Below, piece after piece: positions 377-63,519 of a stretch of 64,000 bases of DNA (positions within the stretch are counted from its first letter, which is position 1; the number at the start of each line of letters is the position of its first letter). The notes beneath the pieces are model-generated. The model was not told the origin of the DNA and did not search any database. It saw only the letters and a program-made list of their open reading frames with translations. The stretch covers positions 86,428,001 through 86,492,000 of the forward strand of contig NC_043002.1 in the NCBI RefSeq assembly GCF_006345805.1. The letters run 5' to 3'. This DNA is from Octopus sinensis. Its lineage: Eukaryota. The position numbers and the translations under genes were made by a program.

Positions 377-411
<35 letters not shown>

Positions 412-452
412 TATATATATATATATATATAACATATATATATATATATATA

Positions 453-2760
453 CTTTAGATGAGATGCAGTTTGGGTTCGTGCCAGGAAAAAGTACCACTG
501 ATGCTATATTCCTGGTAAGGCAGCTGCAGGAGAAATACCTAGCCAAAGATAAGCCCCTGTACCTAGCTTTCGTTGACATGGAGAAAGCTTTTGATAGGGT
601 CCCCCGATCCCTTATCTGGTGGTCAATGAGGAAACTAGGGATAGATGAATGGCTGGTGAGGACTGTGCAAGCCATGTACAGAGATGCCGTAAGTAAGGTT
701 AGGGTTGGCAACATGTACACAGAAGAATTCAAAGTAGAGGTTGGGGTCCACCAGGGTTCAGTACTCAGCCCCCTCCTATTTATCATAGTACTCCAGGCAA
801 TTACGGAGGAATTCAAGACAGGCTGTCCCTGGGAGCTCCTCTACGCTGACGACTTGCTCTATTGCTGAGTCACTATCAGAACTGGAGGAGAAGTTCCAGG
901 TGTGGAAGCGGTTTAGAATCAAGGGGCCTTAGAGTCAACCTAGCTAAAACCAAAGTACTAATAAGTAGAAAGGTAGACAATCCACAAATATCTTCAGGAA
1001 GATGGCCCTGCTCGATCTGTAGAAAAGGTGTAGGTAGAAACTCTATAAGATGTACCAGTGTAAGGCTATGGACACATAAGAGGTGCAGCAATGTCAAAGG
1101 TAGGCTAACTGGGAACATAGTTTTTGTATGTGGCAGATGCTCGGGAGCATTAACCTCCGAAAATCTGCAGAAAACAAATTCCGTCACTTTCCAGGGGGAA
1201 AAACTAGAAGTAGTTGATAGCTTCCGTTATCTAGGTGACCAAGTCAGTAGTGGGGGTGGGTGCGCTGAAAGTGTAACGCTAGAATAAGAATAGCCTGGGC
1301 AAAGTTTAGGGAGCTCTTACCTCTGCTGGTGACTAAAGGCCTCTCGCTCAGAGTAAAAGGCAGACTGTGATGATGCGTGTGTACGAACAGCCATGCTACA
1401 TGGCAGCGAAACATGGGCCTGTGATGCTGAGGACATGCGTAAGCTCGTGAGGAATGAAGCCAGTATGCTCCGATGGATGTGTAATGTCAGTGTACATACT
1501 CGACAGAGCGTTAGCACCTTGAGAGAAAGTTGTACCTAAGAAGCATCAGTTGTGTGTGCAAGAGAGACGATTGCGCTGGTATGGTCATGTGGCGAGAATG
1601 GATGAAGATAGGTGTGTGAGAAAGTGCCAATCCCTAGCAGTTGAGGGAACCCGTGGAAGAGTAGACCCAGGAAAACCTGGGACGAGGTGGTGAAGCACGA
1701 CCTTCGAACTTTAGGCCTCACTGAGGAAATGACCAGAGACCGAGACCTTTGGAAATATTCTGTACGTGAGAAGACCAGGCAGGACAAGTGAGCCCAGCCA
1801 CTTATGAATGCCTTTCCTCCCTTGGACACAAAGACCGGTTGAGGCAAGCGAAGTCGATATAGAACCTCATCCGACGACAGACACCCATCCCAACCCCCCA
1901 TGCTTGCGAAGACATGTTGGGGCAAGCGAAATCGAAATCGAAATCGAAACCAATGAACCAGCCAGGATCCCTGGCCTGGTGGTACGTAAAAAGCACTATC
2001 CGACTCGGGGCCGTGGCACGTAAAATACTCCAATGCGACGTACGACAGGCACCCATGCCAACCCCCTTTGCTTGTGAAGACATGTTGGGGCAAGCGAAAT
2101 CGAAATCGAATTGAACCAGCCAGGATCCCTGGTCTGGTGGTACGTAAAGCACTATCCGACTCGTGGCCGTGGCACGTAAAATACTCCAATGCGACCGTAC
2201 GACAGGCACCCTTGCCAACCCCCTTTGCTTGTGAAGACATGTTGGGGCAAGCGAAATCGAAATCGAAATGAATGAACCAGCCAGTATCCCTGGTCTGGTG
2301 GTACGTAAAGCACTATCCGACTCGTGGCCGTGGCACGTAAAATACTCCAATGCGACCGTACGACAGGCACCCTTGCCAACCCCTTTGCTTGTGAAGACAT
2401 GTTGGGGCAAGCGAAATCGAAATCGAATTGAACCGCCAGGATCCCTGGTCTGGTGGTACGTAAAAAGCACTATCCGACTCGTGGCCGATGCCAGCACCGC
2501 CTCGACTGGCTTCCGTGCCGGTGGCACATAAAATACACAATCTGACCGTGGCCGTTGCCAGCCCCGCCTGGCACCTGTGCAGGTGGCACGTAAAAAGCAC
2601 CCACTACACTCACGGAGTGGTGGCGTTAGGAAGGGCATCCAGCTGTAGAACATTGCCAAATTAGACTGGAGCCTGGTGCAGCCTTCTGGCTTCCCAGAAC
2701 CCCGGTCGAAACCGTCAACCCATGCTAGCATGGAGAACGGACGTTAAACGACGATGATGA
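453..2760 (+). mobile_element. RTE-clade LINE, 5'-truncated (RT to 3' tail), copy 1 of a tandem pair
   Basis: Translates to LDEMQFGFVPGKSTTDAIF..FVDMEKAFDRV..GVHQGSVLSPLLF..LLYADD..SFRYLG..RLRWYGHV..GRPRKTW, stop about 1789-1791. Long 3'UTR with tandem modules, (GAT)n tail, inserted in a (TA)n tract. Frameshifts are 1-bp indels. Confidence 0.93.
1870..2480 (+). repeat. Tandem ~158-168 bp modules in RTE 3'UTR (copy 1)
   Basis: GACATGTTGGGGCAAGCGAAATCGAAATCG recurs at 1911, 2079, 2236, 2396. Confidence 0.9.
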
Positions 2761-2796: not shown

Positions 2797-5101
2797 CTTT
2801 AGATAGATGCAGTTTGGGTTCGTGCCAGGAAAAAGTACCACTGATGCTATATTCCGGTAAGGCAGCTGCAGGAGAAATACCTAGCCAAAGATAAGCCCCT
2901 GTACCTAGCTTTCGTTGACATGGAGAAAGCTTTTGATAGGGTCCCCCGATCCTTATCTGGTGGTCAATGAGGAAACTAGGGATAGATGAATGGCTGTGGG
3001 ACTGTGCAGCCATGTACAGAGATGCCGTAAGTAAGGTTAGGGTTGGCAACATGTACACAGAAGAATTCAAAGTAGAGGTTGGGGTCCACCAGGGTTCAGT
3101 ACTCAGCCCCCTCCTATTTATCATAGTACTCCAGGCAATTACGGAGGAATTCAAGACAGGCTGTCCCTGGGAGCTCCTCTACGCTGACGACCTTGCTCTT
3201 ATTGCTGAGTCCTATCAGAACTGGAGGAGAAGTTCCAGGTGTGGAAGGAGGGTTTAGAATCAAGGGGCCTTAGAGTCAACCTAGCTAAAACCAAAGTACT
3301 AATAAGTAGAAAGGTAGACAATCCACAAATATCTTCAGAAGATGGCCCTGCTCGATCTGTAGAAAAGGTGTAGGTAGAAACTCTATAAGATGTACCCAGT
3401 GTAAGCTATGGACACATAAGAGGTGCAGCAATGTCAAAGGTAGGCTAACTGGGAACATAGTTTTTGTATGTGGCAGATGCTCGGGAGCATTAACCTCCGA
3501 AAATCTGCAGAAAACAAATTCCGTCACTTTCCAGGGGGAAAAACTAGAAGTAGTTGATAGCTTCCGTTATCTAGGTGACCAAGTCAGTAGTGGGGGTGGG
3601 TGCGCTGAAAGTGTAACTGCTAGAATAAGAATAGCCTGGGCAAAGTTTAGGGAGCTCTTACCTCTGCTGGTGACTAAAGGCCTCTCGCTCAGAGTAAAAG
3701 GCAGACTGTATGATGCGTGTGTACGAACAGCCATGCTACATGGCAGCGAAACATGGGCTGTGACTGCTGAGGACATGCGTAAGCTCGTGAGGAATGAAGC
3801 CAGTATGCTCCGATGGATGTGTAATGTCAGTGTACATACTCGACAGAGCGTTAGCACCTTGAGAGAAATGTTGTACCTAAGAAGCATCAGTTGTGGTGTG
3901 CAAGAGAGACGATTGCGCTGGTATGGTCATGTGGCGAGAATGGATGAAGATAGGTGTGTGAGAAAGTGCCAATCCCTAGCAGTTGAGGGAACCCGTGGAA
4001 GAGGTAGACCCAGGAAAACCTGGGACGAGGTGGTGAAGCCGACCTTCGAACTTTAGGCCTCACTGAGGAAATGACCAGAGACCGAGACCTTGGAAATATT
4101 CTGTACGTGAGAAGACCAGGCAGGAAAGTGAGCCCAGCCCACTTATGAATGCCTTTCCTCCCTTGGACACAAAGACCGGTTGAGGCAAGCGAAGTCGATA
4201 TAGAACCTCATCCGACGACAGACACCATCCCAACCCCCCATGCTTGCGAAGACATGTTGGGGCAAGCGAAATCGAAATCGAAATCGAAACCGAATTGAAC
4301 CAGCCAGGATCCCTGGCCTGGTGGTACGTAAAAAGCACTATCCGACTCGGGGCCGTGGCACGTAAAATACTCCAATGCGACCGTACGACAGGCACCCATG
4401 CCAACCCCCTTTGCTTGTGAAGACATGTTGGGGCAAGCGAAATCGAAATCGAATTGAACCAGCCAGGATCCCTGGTCTGGTGTACGTAAAGCACTATCCG
4501 ACTCGTGGCCGTGGCACGTAAATATACTCCAATGCGACCGTACGACAGGCACCCTTGCCAACCCCCTTTGCTTGTGAAGACATGTTGGGGCAAGCGAAAT
4601 CGAAATCGAATTGAACCCACAGTATCCCTGGTCTGGTGGTACGTAAAGCACTATCCGACTCGTGGCCGTGGCACGTAAAATACTCCAATGCGACCGTACG
4701 ACAGGCACCCTTGCCAACCCCCTTTGCTTGTGAAGACATGTTGGGGCAAGCGAAATCGAAATCGAATTGAACCAGCCAGATCCCTGGTCTGGTGGTACGT
4801 AAAAAGCACTATCCGACTCGTGGCCGATGCCAGCACCGCCTCGACTGGCTTCCGTGCCGGTGGCACATAAAATACACCAATCTGACCGTGGCCGTTGCCA
4901 GCCCCGCCTGGCACCTGTGCAGGTGGCACGTAAAAAGCACCCACTACACTCACGGAGTGGTTGGCGTTAGGAAGGGCATCCAGCTGTAGAAACATTGCCA
5001 AATTAGACTGGAGCCTGGTGCAGCCTTCTGGCTTCCCATAACCCCGGTCGAACCGTCCAACCATGCTAGCATGGAGAACGGACGTTAAACGACGATTGAT
5101 G
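2797..5101 (+). mobile_element. RTE-clade LINE, 5'-truncated, copy 2 of the tandem pair
   Basis: Same truncation point (CTTTAGAT..ATGCAGTTTGGG), same RT motifs, stop about 4129-4131, same 3'UTR and tail; period about 2344 bp. Confidence 0.93.
4210..4820 (+). repeat. Tandem ~156-171 bp modules in RTE 3'UTR (copy 2)
   Basis: Same motif at 4251, 4422, 4579, 4735. Confidence 0.9.
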
Positions 5102-7593: not shown

Positions 7594-9602
7594 GTGCTAT
7601 GTCTTTTTGTCCAACATCACATTGTCAAACTTCTTTTTGTCCACATCTTTTGGTCCAATGTCTTTTTGTCCAATGATTTTTTTTGTCCAATCTTTTGTCC
7701 AATTTTAAATAAACTCTTTAGAAAAGGTGAAAATCTCTAATGATATTTCACAGAACTATAATGAGCCTCGCTGTAAGATTGTTATTATCATTCTTTTTCC
7801 TTCTCTGTTAACAGTTTTACTTTCTCATTTACTTTCACTCCCTTTAGTATGGTACTGTATGTAGAGAGTGCTGCAAATTTAGTGTACATATTTTTAATTT
7901 ACCCATCCCGAAATAACAAAGTTCATAGTATCGACCAAAAACAAAAGAAAAGTAGTTGATGAAAGTAATTACATCTACGATTTTCATTCAAGAAATACAA
8001 AACTAGGAAAAGATTACTGGAAATGTGAGAAAAGAAGGCTATGTTCAGTGTGAATTTACATGGTAACGGAAAACAATGAACCAAAAATTATTTATTTTTC
8101 TAGTGAGCACCTTCATCCATCTGGTGTAGATTTGTTAAATGCTAGAAAGCAGATGCAGAAATAAAGCATAGGGTGGTGGAAAACATAGCAGCAAGTTCAC
8201 GTAGCATGATAGCAGTTAAGTTTACACAGCTGACAGAAGAGAATTGCTCTCAACTTCCTCATTTGCCTGTACTTTCAAGGACTATTCAAAGGTGCCAACA
8301 AAAAATTCTGGATTTCCCACTAATCCAGGGGCTAGAACTGGTTTTGAAATACCTGAAGAATATTGTAATGCTGATAATGGTGAACAGTTTCTGAGATACG
8401 ATTCAGGTATCAAGGATCAACAGTGCATACAAGTATTTGCATCAGAAAGTGCTCTTCGGGATATAGCATCATATCGAGTTTGGACATTTGATGGAACATT
8501 CAAAATTATGCCAGAACAGTGGTTTCAACTGTTTAGCATTCATGTACAAGTTAAATGTAGCAGTTTCCCCCAGGTCTTTGCATTACTGCTGAATAAAACA
8601 AAGAAGACATGAATTATTTTTCGAGCAATTGAAAATTATGTAACCTATTGCATATCTGCTAGATCTCATGGCAGATTTCCAAGTTGCAGTTCATAAAACA
8701 TTTAATTCATCATTCCCTAATTCACCTGTTGTGGCATGTTTGTTTCATTTGAACCTGTCAGTATTTCGAAAAATTACAGATTTAGACATCAAAGAAAAAT
8801 ACAATAAGGATTCTGAATTCTGTCTTAAAATTCGACGTTTTTCAGCATTAGCCTTCCTACCCATTGAAGATGTAGAAGAGGCCTATGAAAAATTAATTGA
8901 CAATGAAGAAATACCTGCTGAATTTATCGCCTACTTCATCTTGACTTACATAGGCATTGTGAGAGGACGTGGTGCTAGATGAAGGAGAGAACCACCTACA
9001 TTCCCGATAGCTGTATGGAATGTTAATCAATGTATTCTTCAAGATCTTCTCAGAACAAATAATGCTGCAGAGGGATTTCATTCTGTGATAAGGCATTTGG
9101 TAGGCGGAGCACATTTGAATATTTGGAAATTAATCAAAATTCTGAAGAAAGAGGAAGGGTTCGTTCAGGGTAAGATGACTCAAATTCTTCGAGGAGATCC
9201 GTCAAATTCATGTACACGATATCGTAGAATAACTGACTGCCTCAAAAGATTTGTCATTGAATATGGGTCAACTAGAAAAATTGATTTTTTGAAGAGTGTG
9301 GCATATAATTTGCATCAATTTTAAGTAATCATAATAAATCATCAGTTATATCATATTACTTTTTTAAAATGACTTTTTTTTCAAATACATTTTTCCACAG
9401 TATTTTACTTGAATCCTATCAATAAGATTCTCAATGATTATTTGGTTTTGATATTTTCTAAACTTGTTTTCTAAAGAGTTTATTTAAAATTGGACAAAAT
9501 GTTGTTAGACAAAACATCATCAGACAAAAAGACGTCAGACCAAAAGGTGTGGACGAAGTAATGTTGGACAAAAAGTGACATCAGACGAAGAGTTGGGTCA
9601 TG
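7594..9602 (+). mobile_element. Mutator/MULE DNA transposon, decayed, inserted into a SINE
   Basis: 9-bp TSD CAGCCAAGA at 7585-7593 and 9603-9611; imperfect ~130-bp TIRs built of TTGTCC(A) subrepeats with a near-identical inner core TTTGTCCAATTTTAAATAAACTCTTT. Confidence 0.9.
7905..9324 (+). pseudogene. FLYWCH + MULE DDE transposase, disrupted
   Basis: YIY..DYWKC..C..HxH (FLYWCH-like), WTFDGTFK, MADF..ACLFHL, RTNNAAEGFHS; in-frame stops and frameshifts. Confidence 0.88.
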
Positions 9603-10159: not shown

Positions 10160-10410
10160 GAGGAGGTTCAAGGCTTAGTAATTAGGGTATCATACTCATG
10201 ATCACAAGATTGTGGTTTCAATCCCTGGACTTAATGATGCATTGTATTCTTGAGCAAAACACTTCATTTCACATTGCTCCCATCCGCTCAATAGAAAAAA
10301 TGAATAATCCTGCTGATAGACTGGCTTCCCTTCCATGTGGGTAATATATAGATCACAGAATCCTGAAAACCAGCCTTATGAACCTATGGCTCGGGAAGGA
10401 CCTTTGATCC
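10160..10410 (+). mobile_element. SINE family B
   Basis: GGCTTAGT..GGTTTCAATCCC head, TCTTGAGCAAAACACTTCATTTCACATTGCTCC core, GGCTCGGGAAGG tail. Confidence 0.7.
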
Positions 10411-19551: not shown

Positions 19552-20634
19552 TATATATTTATATACACACACACATATACATATATATCATCATCGTGGC
19601 ATAGGTTCGACAATTTGTCACAGTACAAGAGTCAGTTTTTATTTGATGTTTCTGCCTTCTTGGAAAGTTTTGCGGAACATATCTCATGTTAAATATGGTT
19701 TCTTCAATTGGATGTCCTTCTTAACATCATCCACTTTATAGGATGTACTGAAAGCATTTTATTATGCCACCAGCATAGAGAGACCCAAGAATTTTCCTTA
19801 TTTTGTGTTCATTTGTCGTTCATTACTTTTACTTTCTGTTTTCCTCGCATTTCTGGCCTCAAAAGTGTGGACACAATATGGGTAACAAGGAGAATAGAGA
19901 TAAATCAGTCTGTCAGTCAGTAGGATTTGAGTGGGGTCGGTAAGAGCCCACTGTAGTTACCATTGTAGTTGCTATCGAAAAGTGCAGTACAGAATTGAAG
20001 AAGTAACTCTTTTGTAAAATATATTTCATAATTTGATAAAATATTATTTCATAGCTTAATTAAGAGATAATAAAATGAGCTTGTTATGAATAGAAAACAG
20101 TGATAAAAAGAAACATAATATAAGCTTCTTGTTCTAAAATGCAGCAGTGTGACGATACTGAAAGTAAGGTCATCAATGGTCAAATGGAGAGTTAAATAAA
20201 GTAATAAGGGAAAGATAATTGAATTCAGAATGGTTGTGAGTACAGCAATCAGATAATAATTGTTTATTCAATAACCATGAAGACTGAGATTATTTTGAAG
20301 GGAAGGGAAATAGTAATTTTGATAATTATGTCTGTCCTAAATATTGCACTGATGTCAGTGAAATGATTTCAACTAGAAATAAAAGTACTGTTTCTAAATA
20401 GTTGGTTGTAAAAGGAGCTAAACTTATAATACTATACAAATAATATATGTCTGCATTTATATGCATGTATACACATATAAATACACAACCATATATATGT
20501 AATATTGTATATGTATGTATGTATGTATGTATAGGGCATCCAACCATAGAAACCATGCCAGATCAGACCTGGTCAGACCATCCAACCCATGCCAGCATGA
20601 GAGAATTCTAAATGATAATTATTTCCAATTTTGG

Positions 20635-22855: not shown

Positions 22856-24106
22856 CAGGGGTTGGAGAAAATAATGGAAACACCTGGCATCATAATTTTG
22901 AAATATATATAAAATCGTAAAAAGCTTGTTTATATTTATGTTTTTTTGATTTATTATTAGTGTTGCTTAATATGTTTTGCTAAAATTGCTGTTTCTTTTC
23001 AGATATCATCAGAAAGGGTAATTAAAATTAATTAAAATGACTGATCTATCAGACTTTCAGAGAGGTCAAATTGTTGGTATTCATATGGCAGGCACTAGCG
23101 TAACGGAAACAGCCGAAATGTTGTGTGTATTAAGAAGTACTGACTTGAAAGTAAAGACAGCCTTTGAGAAAGAGAGAAAAATCTCCGCATTGAAACAAAA
23201 CTCTGGAAGAAAACCAAAACTTTCAGATAGGGACCGTTGGACTCTTACGCGAATTGTTAGAAAGGATCACAAAAGTACAGCTCCCAAAATTTCTACAGAG
23301 CTTAATGACAACCTTAAGAACCCAGTTTCCACAAAAACTGTTTTCTGGGAGCTGCACAAAGCCATATTTCACAAGAGGGCTGCAATTAGAAACCCACTAT
23401 TTTCAAAAACAAATATTGCAAAGTGTTTAGAGTGGAGTAAAAACTTACAGAATTGGTCCCTAGAGCAGTGGAAGATTGTTATTTTCTCAGACTAGTCATT
23501 CTTTACCTTATTTCCAACCGCCAGCTGAGTATACATATGGAGACAGCCAAAAGAAACATTTGACCCAGACTGCCTTCTTCTAACTGTTAAACATGGAGGA
23601 GGATCTATGATGATGGGGGGGGGGGCTATATCTTGGAAATCCACCCGCCCAATGGTTTTCCTTCATGGCAGAATTAATAGACTATTTAAGCCTTTTATCT
23701 GATCAAATTCATCCTATGGTTGAGAAACTGTTTCTGGAGGGAAACACAATCTTTCAGGATGATAATGCACCAGTTCACACAGCTAAAGTTGTTACTGAAT
23801 GGCATGAGTAACATTCTAAAGAAGTTGAACATTTTATCTGGCCACCACAGTCCCCAGATCTCAATATTATCGAACATTTATGGTGCATTTTAGAAAAACA
23901 AGTAAGGAGTTGATATCCTCCACCATCATCACTACAAGAACTGGAGACTGTTTTAGCTGAAGAATGGACAAAAATTCCTTTGGAAACAATTCAAATTTTG
24001 TATGAGTCCATACCTCATAGAATTCAAGCCAAAGGCGGTTCTACCCCATATTAAAATTAATTTGTTTGAAATTTTAAGGTATTTCCATTATTTTGTCCAA
24101 CCCCTG
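22856..24106 (+). mobile_element. Tc1-type transposon, full length (1251 bp), DD36E spacing
   Basis: TA TSDs; 30-bp TIRs CAGGGGTTGG(A/C)..ATAATGGAAA(C/T)ACCT with 2 mismatches; transposase 23037-24054 with stops; VIFSD, FQDDNAP, SPDLNIIE. Confidence 0.93.
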
Positions 24107-27787: not shown

Positions 27788-27978
27788 ATTCATTCAACTA
27801 AAAAAACTCTTCAAGACAGAGCCCCAGCATGGCCACAGTCTAATGACTGAAACAAGTAAAAGATAGAAGTGTGTAAATATATATATATATAATTATATAT
27901 ATATATATATATGTGTAGCAGAACTACATAATACATATCCAAAGTGAATTGGTAGATGGAAACTGAAAGAAGGCCTTC

Positions 27979-28017
<39 letters not shown>

Positions 28018-28161
28018 ACACACACACACATATATATATATATACATATATATGTGTGTGTGTGTATATATGAAGGCCTTCTTTCAGTTTCCATCTACCA
28101 AATCCACTTGCAAGGCTTTGGATATGTATTATGTAGCTCTGCTACATATATATATATATAG

Positions 28162-28658: not shown

Positions 28659-28823
28659 TCAAGATTCCTTTATTTTTTCAATTTCTCCAAAACTGTCTTC
28701 AAATCTTTGCAACCAACCATAAATTTTTTCATAAATATAACTCATGGTTTTCCCACAAGAAGCCATTGTTTCTGATATGTTTTCCAAATGTTCTTCTGTG
28801 TTCAGTTCTCTATGCTGAGTTGA
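28659..28823 (-). CDS. Gene 2, terminal coding exon, 165 nt including TGA
   Basis: gctaattttag|TCA; STQHRELNTEEHLENISETMASCGKTMSYIYEKIYGWLQRFEDSFGEIEKIKES*. Confidence 0.83.
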   Translation of the reverse strand, partial: STQHRELNTEEHLENISETMASCGKTMSYIYEKIYGWLQRFEDSFGEIEKIKES

Positions 28824-29299
28824 CTAAAATTAGCGTTAAAAAACAAATACAATTAGGTAGCTTAACAGAATATTTGCCTATTCTTAGTGTTTTAGCAAAT
28901 ACAACTGGCTGAAAAACGAAGGTGGCTTCATTGAGGTTTGAACTCAGAACAAATACCACAAGACAAAAGTAAGAACAGCTACTACAAGATATTTTTGTCC
29001 AATGCTCTAACAACACGGCTAATCCACTGCCCTTAATTTCTAACACAACAGAAAGCCAGAAATTTGGAGAAAGGGATAGTCATTTAAATCAATACCTGCC
29101 TTCTAATATTTTATTGGTATTTTATTGATTGACTCCTGAGGGAATGAAAGACAAAATTGACCTTGGCAGAATTTGAACTTAGAAGTAAAATGTTGGAGAA
29201 AATACCACAACATATTTAGTTCAATGATCTAAAGATTCTGCCAGTCAGTCCACTACCTTTGAAAACCTATGTAATTACTATAATAATAAATAAATGCGT

Positions 29300-29542
29300 C
29301 CTTTTAAAGCCTAGCCAGGCTCATGGGCCCGGTTTCCCAGTTTCTATGGCGTGTGTGTTCCCCAGCTGGATGGGATGCCAGTCCATTGCAGCGTTACTCA
29401 TTTTTGCCAGCTGAGTGGACTGGAGCAATGTGAAATGAAGTGCTTTGCTCAAGAACACAATGTGTTGCCCAGTCCAGGAATTGAAACCACAATCTTACAA
29501 TCATGATTCTGACACCCTAACCACTAAGCCACATGCCTCCAC
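29300..29542 (-). mobile_element. SINE family B
   Basis: Reverse complement of the GAGGCATGTGGCTTAGTGG head and CTTGAGCAAAGCACTTCATTTCACATTGCTCCAGTCCACTCAGCTGG core. Confidence 0.82.
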
Positions 29543-29749
29543 ATGTAATTACTATAATTGGTATTAATTTTCAACAGCATTTCCTTCTCCAGTATAGATA
29601 CAACATGAATTTCCTGGTATCTTTGGTACTGAAACTATTCCAGATTACTGACTTTTCTGAACCAGAGCTGATCACACTCTGAATTAAATATGAAATTTAC
29701 TTAAATGATTAAATGAAATACAGGTACCTACTTGTACATTAGTATAAAT

Positions 29750-29855
29750 GTATTGCTCTGGCTACACATATACTAAGATTGGAACAATACAGAGAAGATT
29801 AGCATGACCCTGCACAAGGATGACATGCAAATTTGTGAAGAGTTCCATATTTCTT
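29750..29855 (+). pseudogene. U6: U6 snRNA retro-pseudogene, full length
   Basis: CACATATACTAAGATTGGAACAATACAGAGAAGATTAGCATGACCCTGCACAAGGATGACATGCAAATTTGTGAAGAGTTCCATATTT matches canonical U6 (ACAGAGA box, AGC triad); several substitutions are at CpG sites. Confidence 0.93.
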
Positions 29856-29980
29856 GCCATAAAAACCATGCCAAAACAGACTCAGAAGCATGGCACAGGC
29901 TCCTACCAGGCCAGCTCCAGTCAAACTGTCCAACCCATGGAAGGAGGACATTACATGACGATGATGATGATGATGATGAT
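29856..29980 (+). mobile_element. RTE-type 3' tail fused to U6
   Basis: CCATAAAAACCATGCCAAAACAGAC..GTCAAACTGTCCAACCCATG..(GAT)n resembles the tails at 2640-2760 and 55620-55750. Confidence 0.8.
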
Positions 29981-30279
29981 ACTCGTTTATATTAATATAG
30001 CACACTGCAAGATACCAAGTAAACTAGCATGGCTGTCACAGGAATTTGGAGTTCCTGCTTGTAAATTAGTGTAGATTATAAGAGGTTCCAGAGACCATCA
30101 GTATTTGGAAAGTTGGCATTGTACCTGTTTTACTCAATAGAGATATGTTCTTGATTTGGCTTTTGCTTTTGCTTTTGCTTTGTAAAGTATACTTTTCAAA
30201 ATATTATTTATATCCAAAATATAATTCTTCTCTTATATCAGTTTTATTTCCAAATATGGGAGAATTTCTAAAAACCTAC

Positions 30280-30323
30280 CTCCACCATGAATTCTGTCAT
30301 TTTCCGCATCATCTGCAACAGTT
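30280..30323 (-). CDS. Gene 2, penultimate coding exon, 44 nt, phase 1->0
   Basis: catttttattctag|AA...GAG|gtaggt; (E)LLQMMRKMTEFMVE. Confidence 0.85.
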
Positions 30324-30596
30324 CTAGAATAAAAATGAACCATAATGTTATATACTATATTAAAGTTATTGCCAACAGATATAGCCAGTGTATTAATTTA
30401 ATGGTGACAGTTCAGAGTTGTAGATGTTTGGCAAGTGACTTCATCTGAGACTGTCTGTTGAAATGAAAAATACTATATTGTAAGAAGAGTTATGAAAGTA
30501 ACTTAAAACACACACACACACACACACACACATGTACGTGCATGCAATGAGTGACCCTTGGTGGAGAGAAGCCGAAGGAGGTCACTTGTGTGTGTT

Positions 30597-38329: not shown

Positions 38330-40052
38330 ATTAACTTTGTGGTAACGGTTTTCTTTTTCATCAAGCAACTAGGTTGCACTGACGGTAATCATCTCAGCTG
38401 AGATCAGCAATTGGTGCACAACAATGGTTCGGTGAATATTTATATCAACTGCTTTAACCAGTTTACGGTAGTAATTCATTCAGTTGCCTGTGTGCAGTAA
38501 TGGTAATTGTGCTGATTGAGGTCGGCACTCAAGCTCTGAGATAATGTTTGGCATATATTTACGTCAACTGCTTTAGTGGAAGTACTATTCATTTACCTAA
38601 ACTATATCCTTATGCAGGATGCTCTTGTGGTATTATTCCTGAATAAGGTCACTCAATAGCACAAGTCAGATCAACTTCATGTATTTACAATCACGTGAAT
38701 TCAAAAATTGACTTTAGTGTGGTAGAGTTCAAAACAGAGCACCATACACAGTAGCATATCACATTGTGAACAATGGCATCAAGTTTTCTTATGTTTCTCT
38801 TTTGCTTTACATACTGTGCATCTCTTTGAAGCACTTGTCTTCTTGGAAGTGGGGGGAAACAGTCATAGAAAATGTCCACATCCCTTCACCATGCAGTGAG
38901 GAGAGAGTCCAGTTTGGGGACATCCACACATTCTGTACTTTGGCAGGTCTGATGCTTTGATCATTTCATGGAACAATAGATTCCTGAATGTCAATCCATC
39001 CCCCACACCACCAAGCATCTGCCAAAAATCACAACACACATATCAACTATAAGCAATAAACTTTTTTTTGTATCATTTCACAAATTTTCTCACCGATTTG
39101 TGTGTCATTGCCAGCTGATCTGAGTGATCAACCCTGCCCATCCCTTCATTGTATGGAAACATCGTGGCATCATTTTCGGAAAGAAAGATGTTAACATAGT
39201 TGAATCCCAATTCCAATATGATGCCAGGTTCAGTTTCTTCATGATGTCCATCAGTATCAACAGTGCAAGCAGGACTTTGATTTCATCCCGTGCGGTTGGA
39301 AACCAATCGCTGTCATGTCTGGGTCTGACATTCTGGGGATGGTTTTTAGCATAGTCATTCATTTCATCCACTATATATTGGAACATTTCATCAATCAAAA
39401 ACTTGTGGAAGATTTCCAATAGCTAACTTCCATGTTCAAGTTTTGCCTTTATGCCAGACGTACCAGTAAACCCATGCTGTCAGACAAAATTGTCTCAAAC
39501 TCGCCACACGACATTCTGTTGTCCAGGATCATTCACTGCCACTTGCCAGTACCTTTGATTCACCAGAATATCATCATTGTTATTGGAATCATCTGATTCT
39601 GAACTAGAAAAATACTCACTCTCTGAGTCATCGTCTGAACCAGATGAAACAACTGGTGAAGTGGTGGAGCTTGGTGTAGCTTGGCACAACAATCACAAAT
39701 TTGATGAAACAGAATGTGACAATGATGTTGGCAGAGCCAGAGTGGCAGGACCAGCCTATTGGGTTGTAGATATTTACATGAAACATTTAACTGGCCTATC
39801 AGTTGGATGGTGACAGGTACTAACTCAGGCAACAGGTTCTAAGTCAGGTGGCGTATAATTACGTCAACCAATTTAAAGCATGTACATTGTGAACATAAAT
39901 TTACGTCAACCATTTTAAAAGGGCTAAAACACACAGAATAAATAATGACTTTATAATTCCATTTGAGTCTTTCATCAGTTATGATTATTTTGACAAATAA
40001 ATTAAAAATAACTGTATTATCTGCAAGAACAGGTTGACATCTTTGCAATTAA
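38330..40052 (-). mobile_element. piggyBac (PGBD4-like) remnant with deleted catalytic core
   Basis: Acidic N-terminus (SDDDSESEY), FLIDEMFQYIVDEMNDYA..EIKVLLALLILM..SYW, and C-terminal RCTVC..CHCSQCDMLLC..CFELYH Cys-rich domain; TIRs not clearly seen, boundaries approximate. Confidence 0.75.
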
Positions 40053-42071: not shown

Positions 42072-42608
42072 CTGCAAGAGAAACAATAAACTTAACTTTG
42101 ACAGGCAGATGTGGAATTATCTAAACTAAGAAGGCTTTCACATGGTCTCTAGTTTTGATTCCTCTGCATGGCACCTTGGGAAAATGCTTTCTTCTATAGG
42201 CTTAGGTTAACCAGTACTTTATGATTGAAATTTTAATAGGCAGAAACTTTATTGAAACTCTTCATATATCATCATAATCATCATCATCATTTTAACCTCC
42301 ACTGTTTGACACCTACTGCTTAACACCCACTTTTCCATCCTGGCATGGATTGAATTGAATTTGTTGTTGAAATAGAAATTGTATTTCAACAAATTCCATC
42401 CAACCCATGCCAGCTTGGAAAAGTGGACATTAAAATGATGATAATGATGAAGATGACGACGATGACAATGACAATGATGATGATGATGATGATGACGAAG
42501 AGGAAGAGGACGAGGATGACAATGATGAGAAAGAAGACAATGAGGAGGAAGGTGGCTATGTGTGTAGGTATGTATGTAAGTATGTAGATAGGTAGGTACA
42601 TACATACA

Positions 42609-42642
<34 letters not shown>

Positions 42643-42702
42643 CATATATACATGCATACATACATGCATGCATACATACATACATACATACATACATACA
42701 TA

Positions 42703-43769
42703 CACAGACATGCAGGAAGTAAATAGACACCTTTAATTTTCAAAATTTCTGATCTAAGCGTCTTAATATGTTTTCAGCGGTGTAGAATTTACAACGTAAT
42801 TATTCTTTTTCATTCCAGGTGCCATTATATTAAACATTTGCGAAGAGTAACCATGCCACACACAAAAAATTCAGTAGAACTCAGATTTTCAAAGGGGTTG
42901 TATTTTTGGGCAATCTGAGGCTGGTCTTAGCCAGTGAAAAATTGCTGAAAATCTTCAAATTCCTCTTGCTACTGTTAATAGAATTATAGTGCAAATCAAA
43001 AGCCAAGAAAAAGAATCAACAGATTCTTGTCCCAGCTGATATGGGCCCCCGGAAAGGAAGCTTCACTGTTTGAAGAGAATTGTGGAAAATAATCCCCATT
43101 CAAAGGCTTTTGACATTGCAAAACAGCTAGAAGTTAGTCCAAGAACATGTGTAACATATCTGCATAAGCTTAGGTATTATGGGCAAGCAGAGAGAAGAAA
43201 ACCTCTCTTTCAACCAATTAATATCATGAAAAGAAAAAAATGGGCTAAGGAGATGTCAGAAAAATCCAGTTCATTTTGGGATAGCGTGATTTTCTCAGAT
43301 GAATCCAGATTTGTATTATTTTCAGACAGTGGACGTGTTTGGGTCTGGAGGCTTCCCAATCAAGAATCTGATTTGAAATGACTCCAACCAACTGTGAAAC
43401 ATGGTGGTATCTCTGTAATGGTATGGGGAGCTGTTAACAGCAATGGTCGTTCTGAGCTGATCGAATGTGTTGGAACCATAAACTCTGAAAAATATATCGA
43501 AGTACTTAAGCATGGACTACTTCCATTGTATTCACGTGATTGTTTCAATTGTTGTGTGAAAAGTGGGCAGAAATTCCACAAGAGACACTCACAAAGTTCA
43601 TTAGTTCAATGCCAAAAAGAGTTTCTGAATTAAAAACTGCAAAGGAAATGTCAACAAAATACTAAAGTATGTAGCCCTACCTATCGATTACATATCAAAT
43701 GTTTGCTTTGCGTGTTAAATAAAAGATTTTGAAAATTAAAGGTGTCTATTTACTTCCTGCATGTCTGTG
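42703..43769 (+). mobile_element. Tc1-type transposon, internally deleted
   Basis: Perfect 44-bp TIRs CACAGACATGCAGGAAGTAAATAGACACCTTTAATTTTCAAAAT; TA TSDs; HTH region, [20 protein letters not shown]; the second D/E region is missing. Confidence 0.92.
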
Positions 43770-44929: not shown

Positions 44930-45125
44930 TACATACATACGTACGTAGATACATACATACATACATGCATGCATGCGTGCATACATACATACATACATAC
45001 ATACATACATGCATGCATGCATGCATACATACATACATACATACATACATACATACATACATACATACATACATACATACATACATACATACATACATAC
45101 ATGGTAGCATGCATGTATGTATGTA
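44930..45125. repeat. (CATA)n/(CATG)n microsatellite
   Basis: Tetranucleotide tract. Confidence 0.95.
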
Positions 45126-45299
45126 TGAATAAACTTTTGAAGAAGGTCACCTTGTGCATGGAAACCTGAAGGGCTGGCCTCAGATACTCTATCATCAGAA
45201 CCTCAACAAGAACATCAAATGCTGAAGGTGTGAAACATGTAACCATGTGCTCTTTTCCAAGGTTGCCAACCCTCTGAAGTCTCATGAAAGATCAATTGT

Positions 45300-54480: not shown

Positions 54481-55330
54481 GAGGAAATAAACAGAGAAAG
54501 AATAAAAAAAAAACTTGTGGATTTAGCGGTCAATCATGGTGACTCATATATATATATATATATATATCTATATATATATATGACAGGATTCTTTCAGTTT
54601 CCATCTACTATATCCACTCACAAGGCTTTGGTCAGCCCAAGGATATAGTAGAAGACACATGCCCAAGGTATCACACAGTGGGACTGAAACTGGAACCAGT
54701 ATTATACCTTGATACTGGGTGGACTAAGATCCCTGTTGACTGGCCACTGGTATTTATAGAGTGTTAAACACTTTCAGTATGCAAATTGGGGACTCCTTCA
54801 TAGAGTAACTGCTGCATTTGTTGAGTATATAAATAGTTTGGCTGCTTGTTTCTCTGGAGACCGTCAGAATGATGTAGATGCCTCTGGTGAGAACCCAATA
54901 GGGTTCGAAAACCGATTAAGGTTGTTCATCATTTTGTTTTTCAGTCTGCAGATAAATGGCTAAAAGTTACCCTGTTTGTAATTATACCATATGTTACACA
55001 CACACACATATATATATATACATACATGTGTGTGTGTGTGTGAGTATTTATATGTATATATATATATATGTATATGTATATATTTACATGTATATATATA
55101 TATATTTATGTATATATATTTATATATATATTTGTATGAGTGTGTATATATATTTATATATATATATGTGTGTGTGTATATATTTATATATAAACACACA
55201 CATATATATATATATGTATACCTTGTAGTGGGGTTGAACCCGAAAGCACATAGTTGCAAGCCAAGCTTCTTAACCACAGGTCATCCCTAACTGAGCTAAT
55301 CTACATTACCCAATGTATTTTTTTCCTACT

Positions 55331-55604: not shown

Positions 55605-57600
55605 CATCATCATCATCATCAACATCATCATTTAATATCTATTTTCCATTCAATATCTGCTTGAATTGGATGGTTTGACAGAAGCTGGCCAGCCAGAGCA
55701 CTGTCCAGGCTCCAATAGTCTGTTTTGGCATGGTCTCTATGCCTGGATGCCCTTCTTAATTCCGACCACTTTAAAGAGTGTGATGGATGCTTTCTTTGTG
55801 CTACTAGCATGGGTGCATTCTACATGCCACTGATGCAAGTGCAATTTACGTGGAACCAGCATCTGCAAGACAAAGACCTCTTAGCTGGGAGAGGGAGTTG
55901 GGGCATGTCCATAAAGGACATGCCTGTATGTATGTATGGCTACGATTTTACAAAGCTTGACATGTCTTCTCAAATACAGCAAATCACCAGAACTCCCAGT
56001 CCCTTGTCATTTCTTCAGTGAGGCCCAGCATCTCAAGATTCTTCCTTGCCTCTTTATCCCATGTGTTCCTGAGGCTACCGCTTCAACAGGTTCCCTTCAT
56101 AATTAGAGATTGGTACTTTTTAAGTAGCTGTCCTCATCCATATGAATCACAAGACCATACTAGTGCAGTATTCTCTCTTGCACACTCTATCTGATGCCTC
56201 ATGTACTCAGCTTTCCTCTTAAATCATTTACATTCTTTCATATGTACACACTGACATTACCCATCCAGCAAACCATGCTGGCTTCATTTCTTTCAAGCCT
56301 TTGCAAATCCAATGTAGTCACAGCTTTTGTTTCACTACTATGTAGCATAGCTGTTCATACACAGGCATCATACAATCTGCCTTTCACTCTGAGGGAGAGG
56401 CCCTTAGTTACCAGCAAAGGTAGTAGCTCTCTGAACTTTGCCCAGCTTGTTCTTATTCTAGCAACTATGCTTTCAGAACTTCTTCTTTCACAGCTAACCA
56501 AGTTAGCTGTGGAAGTTAGGATAATAGAAGCTATCTACAACTTCTAAGATTTCCCCAAGCATCTGAGGAAGTTTATTCCCTGTGCATTCTTAATGTTAAC
56601 TGTACCTGCACATTTGCCACACAAAGACTATTTTCTTTGTTAACCTTCCTGTGATATCACTACAGCTTGCACTGTATCAAGTCTCAACCAACACTTTTTC
56701 TGCATATTGAAGTTTGAACCAACACTTTTTCTGCATATTGAGCAGGGCCATCTCCTTGAAGGGACTTGTGATTTATCTGTTTTCCTCCTTACTAGGACTT
56801 TGATCTTTGCTAAATTAACTCTAAGTCTTCCACACCTGAAATTTCTTCTCTAGGTCAGGTAATGATTCAGCTATAAGAACAAGGTCATCAGCATAGAGGA
56901 GCTCCCAGGGGTAGCCGGTCTTGAATTTGTCTGTTAAAGCTTTAAAAAACTATGATAAACAAGAGCAGGCTGAGAACTGACCCTTAGTGAACTCCTACCT
57001 GTACACTGAATTCATTGCTATTCTCATTGCTAAACCTCACCTTACGGGCAGTATCCCTGTACACGGCTTGTACAGCTCTCACTAATTACTCATCTATCCC
57101 TAGCTTCTGCATTGACCACCAGATAAGGGAGTGGGGAAACCTTGTCAAAGGCTTTCTCTGTGTCAACAAAAGCCAAATACAGAGGTTTATTTTGGGCCAA
57201 GTACTTCTTTTGCAGTTGCCTCACCAGGAATATAGCACCAGTCATGCTTCTCTCAAACACAAAACCAAACTGCATCTCATCTACATTAATTCTCTTCCTA
57301 ATTAGTTGAGTTATAATCCTTTCAGTAACTTCCATTATCTGGTCCTGCAATTTGATACCTCTTTAAATATTTCTGTCTAAGGATTCATCTTGAATTTTGT
57401 AGCAGTTGACTATGATACTGTTACACCAGTCATTGGATATGACTCCTTCGTGGACAACCTGACTAGGACATATCCCACTTCACCAGATATTTTAAGCATC
57501 TCAGTAATGATTCCTGATGGTCCAAGGGCTTCCACTGTCTTTATATCCTTAATTACTTTATCTACCAAACTACTGTAGATTCAGATCACTGGTCCCTCAA
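55605..57600 (-). mobile_element. RTE-clade LINE remnant (RT to tail)
   Basis: RINVDEMQFGFV..AIFLVRQLQKKYLA..FVDTEKAFDKV; antisense ORF 56194-56547 parallels 3567-3887; (GAT)n tail at ~55605-55630. Confidence 0.87.
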
Positions 57601-61805: not shown

Positions 61806-62365
61806 ATCATCATCATCATCATCATCATGGTTTAACGTCCGTTCTCCATGCTAGCATGGGTTGGACGGTTCGACCGGGGATCTGGGAAGCCAGAAGGCTG
61901 CACCAGGCTCCGGTCTTATCTGGCAATGTTTCTACAGCTGGATGCCCTTCCTAACGCCAACCACTCCGTGAGTGTAGTGGGTGCTTTTTACGTGCCACCT
62001 GCACTGGTGCCAGGCGAGGCTGGCATCGGCCACGGTCAGATTGGTGCATTTTACGTGCCACCTGCACGGAAGCCAGTCGAGGTGGCACTGGCTTCGGCCA
62101 CGATTCGGATGGTGCCTTTTACGTACCACCGGCACGGAAGCCAGTCGAGGCGGCGCTGGCATCGGCCACGATTCGGATAGTGCTTTTTACGTATCTCCAG
62201 TCCAGGGGTCCTGGAATCTGCCGGGTGCCAGTCATAGGATTGGTTCAATTTCGATGCCGATTTCACTTGCCCCAACAGGTTTTCGCAAGCAAAGTGGGGT
62301 TGGCATAGGTGCCTGTCGTCGGATGAGGTTCGATATCAACTTCGCTTGCCTCAACAGGTCTTTCA
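61806..62365 (-). mobile_element. Young RTE 3'UTR/tail (same family as 453-5101)
   Basis: Near-identical reverse complement of the ~2400-2760 tail, CpG-rich, (CAT)n tail, with its own ~60-bp internal duplication. Confidence 0.9.
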
Positions 62366-62369
62366 ACAA

Positions 62370-63205
62370 GTGTGAAATTGGTTTTCAAAGTTTCATTCAG
62401 GACTCTCATCAGACTTTGACCAAGATGCTTTAACAGAATTAGTGGGATTCAATCCTTGTAAAAGTACTCAGAAATTAGCAGTTGACCTCAACACATCCCA
62501 ATCCACTATCTGCTGCCACTTGGAAAAGCTAGGAAAAGTCAGCAAGCTGGGTGTTTGTGTTCCCCATACTCTTAATGAGAAGACTAGGGATGATCACATG
62601 TCCATAGTGACAAGTCTTCTTTCAAGGCAGAGAAATTACCTGTTTCTCGATAATAACATTAGAGGTAATGAAAAATGTTTTTTTTATGACAATGTTCAAT
62701 GCAAAAGGCAGTGGATTGACAAGGATAAATCTCCAAAACCTATTTCAAAGGCTGAGCTCTGTGGAAGAAAGGTTATGTTGTGTGTATGACAGGATCACCA
62801 CAGCATTATTCAGTTTGATTTTTCAAACCACAATCAAACACAAAATGACAACTTATACTCTCAACAGCTCAAATGTGTGCATGAAAATCTTTTAAGAAAA
62901 TGCCCTGCACTTGTCAATAGGAAAAATGTTGTGCTTCTCCATGATAATGCAAGACCACATTCAGCAACAATCACGCAGGATAAAATATTAAATTTGTGCT
63001 GGTCTGTTCTACCCCATCCACCATATTCACCGGACCTTTCACCAACTAATTCCCATCTTTTTTGCTCTCTACAAAATGGTCTGATGGGGGAAAAAAAATG
63101 TTCTCAAGAAGATGAAGTATGTGGAAAGTTTTTTCCTGTCAAAAAGCTACCTAATAAATGGCAAGAGGTTAATCAAAATAATGGCAATTATACTGATAAT
63201 TGAAA
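62370..63205 (+). mobile_element. mariner (DD34D-type) transposase remnant
   Basis: CVPHTL (WVPHEL-like), LLHDNARPH, HPPYSPDLSPTN; 34 residues between the D and the mutated third D (now N). Confidence 0.87.
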
Positions 63206-63247
63206 ATAATTCTTTGTAAAATTTTTTTCATGACTAAAGGTATTTAG

Positions 63248-63500
63248 TAGAGGTACGTGGCTTAGTGGTTAGGGTGTTGAACTCATGATCATAAGGTTGT
63301 GGTTTCGATTCCTGGACCGGGAGATGCATTGTGTTCTTGAGCAAAACACTTCATTTTCACATTGCTCCAGTCCACTCAGCTGGCAAAAATTAGTAATCCT
63401 GCGACGGACCGGTGTCCCATCCAGGTGGGGAATTTCTACACTACTGAAACCGGGAAACCAGCCCTTATGAGCCTGGCATGGCTCGAGAAGGAACATTTAT
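63248..63500 (+). mobile_element. SINE family B, well preserved
   Basis: GAGGTACGTGGCTTAGTGG A-box, GGTTTCGATTCC B-box, core, GGCTCGAGAAGG tail. Confidence 0.88.
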
Positions 63501-63519
63501 TTAAAGGTATTTAACAAAA

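What the first reader, a model, noticed from the sequence alone, without database searches (positions are those of the whole stretch)
29733..30000. U6 snRNA-RTE chimeric retrocopy joined exactly at the U6 oligo-U end
Seen: a full-length U6 (29750-29855) runs directly into about 125 nt of the RTE-family 3' tail in the same orientation, ending in (GAT)n. The flanks ACTTGTACATTAGTATA (left) and ACTCGTTTATATTAATATA (right) look like a decayed TSD. Established: U6/L1 chimeric pseudogenes occur in mammals, where the U6 3' end is joined to LINE RNA (RtcB-type ligation or template switching) and retrotransposed. Inference: the same process operates here with an RTE-clade partner in a mollusc, which I do not know to be described. 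It lies antisense in the last intron of gene 2.
Basis: partly seen in the sequence, partly recalled or inferred. Interest (0 to 1): 0.72.

Follow-up and report, generated by a model that had tools for sequence, protein, structure and literature searches.

The report
U6–LINE chimeric retrocopy in octopus
A dead, full-length copy of the U6 spliceosomal RNA is fused head-to-tail to the last 125 bases of an octopus LINE retrotransposon inside an intron of Octopus sinensis. It looks like a LINE enzyme copying two RNAs in one insertion event, a process already described in vertebrates, so this extends the known host range and is not a new mechanism.

Summary
Rfam finds one full-length U6 (29748-29854, 91 bits). 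A profile built only from other copies places the 3' module of an abundant LINE family at 29856-29968, starting one base after the U6 oligo-T. It runs into (GAT)7 ending at 29980. An 18-20 nt imperfect direct repeat flanks the whole 233-nt unit, anchored at both ends (P about 0.004-0.015). No comparable repeat flanks the U6 or the tail alone. Chance abutment in this orientation is about 7e-4. The U6 is a pseudogene: all five CpGs in positions 20-107 are mutated and one base is deleted. It lies antisense in the last intron of a myosin-11-like gene.

The best reading is a single retrotransposition event. The reverse transcriptase primed on the LINE microsatellite tail, copied about 105 nt, then continued on U6 RNA, by template switch or on a pre-ligated RNA.

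U6 chimeras with L2 and RTE elements are already published for platypus and Anolis (Doucet 2015). No mollusc case turned up in the papers searched. RTE membership rests on architecture only, not phylogeny. Genome-wide recurrence and the orthologous empty site could not be tested. A low-copy snRNA-headed SINE (SINE/U is annotated in O. vulgaris) is not excluded.

The parts
29730..29747 (+). Left copy of the putative target-site duplication (ACTTGTACATTAGTATAA). It ends at the base before U6 nucleotide 1.
   Evidence: Anchored alignment to the right copy scores 7 (9 with 1-nt slop), P 0.004-0.015.
29748..29855 (+). Full-length U6 snRNA retrocopy (pseudogene) including its oligo-T end TTTCTT (29850-29855).
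   Evidence: RF00026, 91.1 bits, model 1-105 of 105; all 5 CpGs in positions 20-107 are mutated, there is a 1-nt deletion in GGCCCC, and ACAGAGA and AGC are intact.
29856..29959 (+). 5'-truncated 3' module of an abundant LINE family (about the last 105 nt of a roughly 170-nt conserved module). It is closest to the 'B' subfamily consensus.
   Evidence: profile without this copy, 68.6 bits, E 1.6e-20, match starts at 29856..
29960..29980 (+). (GAT)7 microsatellite that ends the LINE family. It is the presumed priming site for reverse transcription.
   Evidence: The other copies end in TTAAA(T/C)GATGATGAT... of variable length.
29981..30000 (+). Right copy of the putative target-site duplication (ACTCGTTTATATTAATATAG). 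It starts at the base after the microsatellite.
28662..30324 (-). Host context: the last two coding exons (30324-30280 and 28823-28662) of the myosin-11-like gene and the intron between them, which holds the element in antisense.
55625..57350 (-). Reference copy of the partner LINE: an RVT_1-coding ORF, the C-terminal coding end, a 3' UTR, the same 3' module, and (GAT)n.
2967..5095 (+). Second reference copy of the partner LINE ('A' subfamily): an RT ORF, a C-terminal ORF, a tandem-repeat 3' UTR, and the 3' module.

Best explanation
This is a chimeric retrocopy made in one target-primed reverse transcription event.

Proposed steps:
1. The endonuclease/reverse transcriptase of an octopus APE-type LINE (RTE-like) nicked this intron.
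2. It primed on the (GAU)n end of a LINE RNA, or of a SINE RNA with the same 3' module, and copied about 105 nt of that module.
3. It then continued onto U6 snRNA and copied it to its 5' end. This happened either because the enzyme switched template to the U6 3' end, or because U6 had already been ligated through its 3' end to a LINE RNA fragment (RtcB-type ligation).
4. Staggered nicks about 18 nt apart gave the flanking duplication.

The copy has no upstream U6 promoter in the right place. It has since decayed as neutral intronic DNA.

Shown here: the anatomy, the exact abutment, the flanking repeat and the pseudogene state. Inferred: the order of copying, the enzyme, and the choice between template switch and ligation.
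For: - The U6 is full length.
- A family profile built without this copy starts its match at 29856, immediately after the U6 oligo-T.
- U6 and tail are in the same orientation, and the unit ends in the family's own (GAT)n.
- The same 3' module is physically continuous with RVT_1-coding ORFs at 55.6-57.4 kb (-) and 0.4-5.1 kb (+), so it is a LINE 3' end.
- The direct repeat is anchored at both outer ends of the unit: score 7-9, P 0.004-0.015. The best repeats around the tail alone (3) or the U6 alone (4) are at background even with 3-nt slop.
- Chance abutment is unlikely. There are 16 other modules in 83.5 kb, about 1e-4 5' ends per base per strand, so about 7e-4 for a same-strand start within 3 nt of the U6 end.
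- No poly(A) and no other sequence lies between U6 and tail.
- The 5' stem of the U6 keeps 4 of 5 pairs through changes on both sides relative to vertebrate U6. This fits a copy of a lineage-specific functional U6 RNA.
- Published precedent: U6 chimeras with stringent LINEs (L2, RTE) and their SINEs occur only as such fusions (PMC4476161).
Against: - There is only one locus.
- The flanking repeat is imperfect (14 of 17 aligned bases plus a 2-nt gap) in AT-rich DNA, and its P value is only about 0.01.
- No orthologous empty site and no second chimera could be examined.
- The junction is ambiguous by a few bases. TTTCTT may be U6 oligo-U with one change, or may partly derive from the LINE's TCCAGCC.
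- The upstream T-stretch signature reported for RTE-type insertions (PMC6007223) is not seen at this site.
- The tail is only 52-71% identical to other copies, so the two halves cannot be dated against each other.
Confidence: 0.75

Rival explanations
1. This is a copy of a low-copy, snRNA-headed SINE family (U6 head plus LINE tail) that arose once as a chimera and then propagated. This locus would then be a daughter copy and not an independent chimera.
For: The 2026 O. vulgaris repeat annotation lists one 'SINE/U' family (369 kb of genome, 19 recent insertions) and one 'U-L1' family. snRNA-headed SINEs exist in crocodilians and probably began as template-switch chimeras (PMC4494074). A TSD-flanked head+tail unit looks the same in either case.
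Against: No second U6 or U6 fragment occurs in 83.5 kb that holds 16 other tail modules. Metazoan U6 uses an external upstream Pol III promoter, so a retrocopy carries no promoter (established knowledge; noted in PMC4494074). The recent SINE/U insertions in O. vulgaris average about 730 bp, not 233 bp. Which snRNA heads that family is not stated.
Confidence: 0.12
2. There were two sequential events. A solitary U6 copy existed here first, and a 5'-truncated LINE tail later inserted exactly at its 3' end (or the reverse order).
For: Short 5'-truncated tail-only insertions of this family exist, for example 20533-20616. RTE-type endonucleases are reported to favour sites near T stretches (PMC6007223), and U6 ends in a T run.
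Against: No direct repeat flanks the tail alone or the U6 alone (scores 3 and 4 against 7-9 for the whole unit). The reported RTE signature places the nick about 10 nt downstream of a T stretch, not at it. Stringent LINEs are not known to make solitary U6 retrocopies (PMC4476161). No poly(A) or other 3' end follows the U6. Chance abutment is about 7e-4.
Confidence: 0.08
3. This is a degenerate U6 gene locus (a DNA-level duplicate), or an assembly or chance juxtaposition with no retrotransposition of U6.
For: The region is AT-rich, so TATA-like strings are common. TATAAA lies just upstream of the U6 start.
Against: The TATAAA is at -8 to -2, not near -30. The flanks are unique sequence with no similarity elsewhere in the window. 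The copy starts at U6 nucleotide 1 and ends at the oligo-T, as expected for an RNA-derived copy. All CpGs are decayed and one base is deleted. The window is identical to a chromosome-level long-read assembly.
Confidence: 0.03

Closest known systems
U6-RTE (RTEX-2_Acar), U6-L2 and U6-SINE chimeras of Anolis carolinensis and platypus (Doucet et al. 2015, PMC4476161)
   Same: U6 is joined to the 5'-truncated 3' end of a stringent, microsatellite-tailed LINE or its SINE, flanked by a TSD. No poly(A)-tailed or solitary U6 copies occur.
   Different: The host is a mollusc. U6 is full length here, whereas most platypus U6-L2 copies are 5'-truncated. The putative TSD is long (about 18 nt) against 1-9 nt for L2. 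Only one copy was seen.
U6/L1 chimeric pseudogenes of mammals (Buzdin 2002; Garcia-Perez 2007; Moldovan et al. 2019, PMC6789731)
   Same: A full-length U6 ending in its oligo-U is fused directly to a 5'-truncated LINE 3' end, in the same orientation, with TSDs. The same two candidate mechanisms apply (template switch, RtcB ligation).
   Different: The partner is not L1. There is no poly(A), and the 3' end is a (GAT)n repeat. The enzyme is presumably of the stringent type that recognises its own 3' module.
SINEU, snRNA-headed SINEs of crocodilians (Kojima 2015, PMC4494074)
   Same: An snRNA-derived 5' part is joined to a retrotransposon-type 3' part. The origin is probably a template switch.
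   Different: SINEU heads are U1/U2 and the families are multi-copy with master copies. Here the head is U6 and only one copy is known.
Template-switch chimeras of Magnaporthe (MINE; Gogvadze et al. 2007, PMC2104539)
   Same: A LINE 3' end is fused to an abundant non-coding cellular RNA in one retrocopy. This shows the process outside vertebrates.
   Different: The host is a fungus, the partner RNA is a different small RNA (WEIRD), and the LINE is different.

Membership tests
U6 spliceosomal RNA (Rfam RF00026) | Covariance-model score above the curated gathering score over the full model | tested here: met
   91.1 bits against 44, model 1-105 of 105.
U6 spliceosomal RNA (functional gene) | Intact conserved core and an upstream type-3 Pol III promoter (TATA near -30, PSE near -55 to -65) | tested here: not met
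   All 5 CpGs in positions 20-107 are mutated and 1 nt is deleted in the GGCCCC stretch. No TATA lies near -30. The mollusc PSE consensus is unknown, so that part is untested.
U6/LINE chimeric retrocopy | U6 on the 5' side, ending at its oligo-U, directly abutting a 5'-truncated LINE/SINE 3' end in the same orientation | tested here: met
   U6 occupies 29748-29855. The independent family profile starts at 29856. Both are on the + strand.
U6/LINE chimeric retrocopy | The unit ends in the 3' terminus typical of the partner LINE | tested here: met
   (GAT)7 at 29960-29980. Other copies end in the same repeat.
U6/LINE chimeric retrocopy | A target-site duplication flanks the whole unit and not its parts | tested here: met
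   Whole unit scores 7-9 (P 0.004-0.015). Tail alone scores 3 and U6 alone scores 4. Support is moderate because the repeat is decayed.
U6/LINE chimeric retrocopy | Recurrence: independent loci with different LINE truncation points | not testable with these tools
   No octopus genome collection can be searched by DNA. Metagenome scans hold no octopus DNA. The protein-word search could not see short ORFs.
RTE clade of non-LTR retrotransposons | A single ORF with an N-terminal APE endonuclease and RT, no ORF1, element about 3.2-3.5 kb | tested here: inconclusive
   Window copies are 5'-truncated and show RVT_1 only. The closest full-length relatives, P0054 and P0075 (62-70% identity in the RT core), have APE + RVT_1 (+PHD) in one ORF of 1031-1042 aa. 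Contig L003 is 3562 nt with 299-nt and 134-nt UTRs and no room for an ORF1. That contig is from another organism.
RTE clade of non-LTR retrotransposons | 3' end made of short (often trinucleotide) tandem repeats | tested here: met
   (GAT)n is present at the end of all well-preserved copies. Microsatellite 3' ends are noted as typical of RTE in PMC9115989.
RTE clade of non-LTR retrotransposons | Phylogenetic placement of the RT domain within the RTE clade | not tested
   No named reference RT set was available. Cluster names were uninformative. PDB holds only L1 and R2 relatives.
snRNA-headed SINE (SINEU-like) | Many copies sharing one head-tail junction and diagnostic substitutions | not testable with these tools
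   No other copy occurs in 83.5 kb. Genome-wide data are unavailable. A SINE/U family is annotated in O. vulgaris.

The most novel reading that the evidence does not exclude
Octopus genomes may carry a recurrent class of U6-headed retrocopies with RTE-type tails, possibly what is labelled 'SINE/U' in O. vulgaris. If these are many independent chimeras, capture of the U6 3' end by LINE machinery (template switch or RtcB ligation) is a conserved bilaterian property. If they share one junction, this would be a U6-derived SINE, that is, a SINE whose head comes from a gene with a purely external Pol III promoter. That would raise the question of how it is transcribed.
Probability: 0.12. Interest if true: 0.65.

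Novelty: new member of a known kind. Interest (0 to 1): 0.35.

Why it matters
U6/LINE chimeras are used as markers of LINE activity and as evidence for template switching or RNA ligation during retrotransposition. They have been documented in mammals, platypus and a lizard, with analogous chimeras in a fungus. A clean example in a cephalopod suggests that the same side reaction occurs with a microsatellite-tailed, RTE-like LINE in a lophotrochozoan. Such fusions are also the presumed starting material for new SINEs, in a genome where SINEs and RTE elements are the dominant repeats. On its own, one decayed intronic copy has no functional consequence. It is an incremental taxonomic extension.

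Tried and rejected
1. Protein-word search with the 84-aa ORF spanning U6, tail and right flank, to find orthologous or paralogous copies: no candidate found.
2. A designed 584-aa query (all open U6 frames plus all frames of both tail consensuses), to pull U6+tail ORFs from Logan/ENA assemblies. All hits were 321 aa or longer, about 0.55 of the query length. Short ORFs therefore seem to have been filtered out. The search returned only U6 or tail fragments inside long gene models (for example O. bimaculoides P0010 and P0024). It says nothing about recurrence.
3. Metagenome scans: a U6-end plus tail pattern gave 0 hits. The tail core alone also gave 0 hits, so the collection holds no octopus DNA and the negative result means nothing.
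4. Orthologous locus: only the O. sinensis gene itself (L001, identical to the window) and a 1.3-kb Logan contig of a distant exon (L002) were retrievable.
5. Sampling more cephalopod DNA through relatives of the RT: L003 and L004 are from other organisms, with no tail and no U6.
6. Clade assignment by source names and by PDB relatives: uninformative.
7. Consensus folding of the tail module: only a weak 6-pair stem, so it was not used.
8. Bacterial-type promoter/terminator and tRNA scans: irrelevant or empty.
9. Rfam in E-value mode: apart from U6, all hits are microsatellite-driven miRNA false positives.
10. Dating the two halves against each other was rejected. The tail family is too heterogeneous, at 49-94% pairwise identity.

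Full report
**What is there.** The window is Octopus sinensis. Positions 18659-64000 are 100% identical to GCA_006345805.1 chromosome CM016864.1. A scan of all 64 kb against Rfam gives exactly one match above a gathering score. It is U6 (RF00026) at 29748-29854 on the + strand, 91.1 bits against a cut-off of 44, covering model positions 1-105 of 105. In E-value mode nothing else credible appears, and the other hits are microsatellite-driven miRNA false positives. A further 19.5 kb of the same chromosome holds no U6.

- All five CpGs in positions 20-107 are mutated, four to TpG/CpA and one by a C-to-A change.
- One G of GGCCCC is deleted.
- The ACAGAGA and AGC elements are intact.
- The 5' stem-loop keeps four of five pairs, although two pairs differ on both sides from the vertebrate sequence. 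I read this as a lineage-specific U6 sequence and not decay (inference).
- TATAAA lies at -8 to -2 and nothing TATA-like lies near -30. This does not look like a promoter-bearing gene copy.

**The tail.** The 125 nt after the U6 oligo-T (TTTCTT, 29850-29855) belong to an abundant repeat.
- BLAST of the tail against the window finds other copies.
- nhmmer finds 16 further copies of a roughly 170-nt conserved module in 83.5 kb.
- My first profile included this copy, so I rebuilt it from the 15 others only. It still hits 29856-29968 at 68.6 bits, E 1.6e-20, and the best of 500 shuffles scores 1.9 bits. The match begins at 29856, the base after the oligo-T.
- The module ends in TTAAA(T/C)GATGATGAT... 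in the family. Here it ends in (GAT)7 at 29960-29980.
- This copy is old. It is 52-71% identical to the others, which are themselves 49-94% alike. It is closer to the 'B' than to the 'A' subfamily consensus.

**What the tail belongs to.** Three copies of the module are physically continuous with reverse-transcriptase ORFs (Pfam RVT_1). They are 383-2754 (+), 2967-5095 (+) and 55625-57350 (-). The module is therefore the 3' end of a non-LTR retrotransposon.

A full HMMER search with the RT core (window 455-868) finds full-length relatives at 62-70% identity. P0054 (1042 aa) and P0075 (1031 aa) each carry an N-terminal APE endonuclease, RVT_1 and a PHD-like finger in one ORF. The PHD-like finger is also present in the window copy. 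The contig carrying P0054 is 3562 nt, with a 299-nt 5' UTR and a 134-nt 3' UTR, and has no room for an ORF1. The C-terminal ORF of the window copy aligns to the P0054 C-terminus (42% identity, E 2e-30).

An APE endonuclease excludes the restriction-like-endonuclease clades (Dong-R4, R2, CRE, Hero). A single ORF in a 3.5-kb unit with a trinucleotide-repeat tail is the RTE pattern. RTE is also the largest LINE group in the sister species O. vulgaris, at 106 Mb in 176 families, and microsatellite 3' ends are noted for octopus RTE elements. I did not place the RT in a phylogeny. Source names and PDB relatives were uninformative. 'RTE-like' is therefore well motivated but not proven. Because only the last 105 nt are present, a SINE sharing this module could equally have been the template. 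This happens with Mon-1 and AnolisSINE2 in vertebrates.

**One event or two.** The sequence ACTTGTACATTAGTATAA ends at 29747, the base before U6 nucleotide 1. The sequence ACTCGTTTATATTAATATAG starts at 29981, the base after the microsatellite.

I scored repeats under a model that requires them to be anchored at both boundaries.

| Unit tested | Score | P value |
|---|---|---|
| Whole unit, no slop | 7 | 0.010-0.015 against random positions with the same spacing; 0.014 against shuffles of the flanks |
| Whole unit, 1-nt slop | 9 | 0.004-0.009 |
| Tail alone, 3-nt slop | 3 | at background |
| U6 alone, 3-nt slop | 4 | at background |

With 16 other modules in 83.5 kb, the chance that a module 5' end falls within 3 nt of the U6 3' end on the same strand is about 7e-4. 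No poly(A) or spacer separates the two parts. The flanks are unique sequence, so no paralogous empty site is available.

**Most likely mechanism.** I propose target-primed reverse transcription by the LINE enzyme, in these steps:
1. Priming on the (GAU)n end.
2. Copying of about 105 nt of the 3' module.
3. Continuation on U6 RNA to its 5' end.
4. Second-strand nicking about 18 nt away.

Whether the enzyme jumped from LINE RNA to the U6 3' end, or copied a U6-LINE RNA already ligated by RtcB (PMC6789731), cannot be told from the DNA. The junction is ambiguous by a few bases, because TTTCTT|GCCATA aligns to the family's TCCA|GCCATA. I put 0.75 on a single chimeric event.

**Rivals.**
- **A propagating U6-headed SINE family (0.12).** The O. 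vulgaris annotation of 2026 lists one SINE/U family (369 kb; recent insertions average about 730 bp) and one U-L1 family, without saying which snRNA is involved. snRNA-headed SINEs are known in crocodilians. Against this, there is no second copy among 16 tails nearby, and U6 has no internal promoter.
- **Sequential insertions (0.08).** Short tail-only insertions exist, and RTE endonucleases are reported to like T stretches. However, no TSD brackets either half. The reported signature puts the nick about 10 nt downstream of the T stretch, not at it.
- **Degenerate gene duplicate or artefact (0.03).**

**Comparison with what is known.** U6/L1 chimeras are classical in mammals. Doucet et al. 2015 (PMC4476161) already showed that the phenomenon is not L1-specific.
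- Platypus has 40 U6-L2/Mon-1 chimeras.
- Anolis has three chimeras each with L1, L2 and RTE (RTEX-2_Acar), plus six with AnolisSINE2.
- The authors concluded that stringent LINEs form only chimeras.

Template-switch chimeras also exist in Magnaporthe (PMC2104539). Full-text searches for U6 chimeras in cephalopods or molluscs found nothing, so the host phylum appears to be new. Verdict: a new member of a known kind.

**Limits.** No searchable collection here contains octopus DNA. My attempt to find U6+tail ORFs in assembled reads was defeated by what looks like a length filter in the word-based protein search. Only the O. sinensis locus itself could be fetched for the host gene. The conclusion therefore rests on one locus.

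Noticed in passing
window 29287-29539 (antisense); similar copies near 63247-63503 and 10205-10375; L001 20042-20295: A tRNA-like SINE head in reverse orientation lies about 200 bp upstream of the U6 chimera (GGAGGC.TGGCTTAGTGGTTAGGG... on the minus strand). It is a separate insertion. ARAGORN does not call it as a tRNA.
   Followed up: partly
window 1536-2760 and 4060-4930 (+); 61850-62430 (-): The 'A' subfamily LINE copies carry a long 3' UTR built of tandem repeats. These give long spurious ORFs on both strands. This is unlike the very short 3' UTRs usually quoted for RTE elements.
   Followed up: no
window 862-1287 (+); P0075 residues 771-815: A PHD-like zinc finger sits between the RT domain and the C-terminal region of this LINE family and its full-length relatives.
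   Followed up: partly
proteins P0010 and P0024 (Octopus bimaculoides gene models): The antisense translation of the tail module (…FSMLAWVGRFD…TRLQSNLAEFLQLDALPNANHS…) is embedded in predicted liprin-alpha and kinase proteins. The module is either exonised or mis-annotated in gene models.
   Followed up: no
window 23037-23495, 43040-43633, 62376-63203 (+); 39076-39419 (-); 8220-9324 (+): Several DNA-transposon remnants fill the introns and flanks of the host gene. They include Tc1/mariner-like ORFs, a piggyBac-like ORF and another transposase-like ORF.
   Followed up: no
protein P0003 (ENA contig, 2.6 kb): A 334-aa ORF reads through three tandem U6 copies about 110 aa apart. This is probably a tandem U6 gene array in some other eukaryote.
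   Followed up: no
window-wide, e.g. 27955-28095, 42557-42701, 44933-45130, 54980-55220: Dense (TG/TA/ATAC)n microsatellites produce dozens of sub-threshold Rfam 'miRNA' matches (mir-297, mir-3149, mir-466). All are below gathering scores and are artefacts of simple sequence.
   Followed up: yes
tool behaviour: The word-based protein search returned only targets of at least about 0.55 of the query length. Long concatenated queries therefore cannot recover short ORFs. Proteins from the representative search were nonetheless accepted by the contig look-up.
   Followed up: partly
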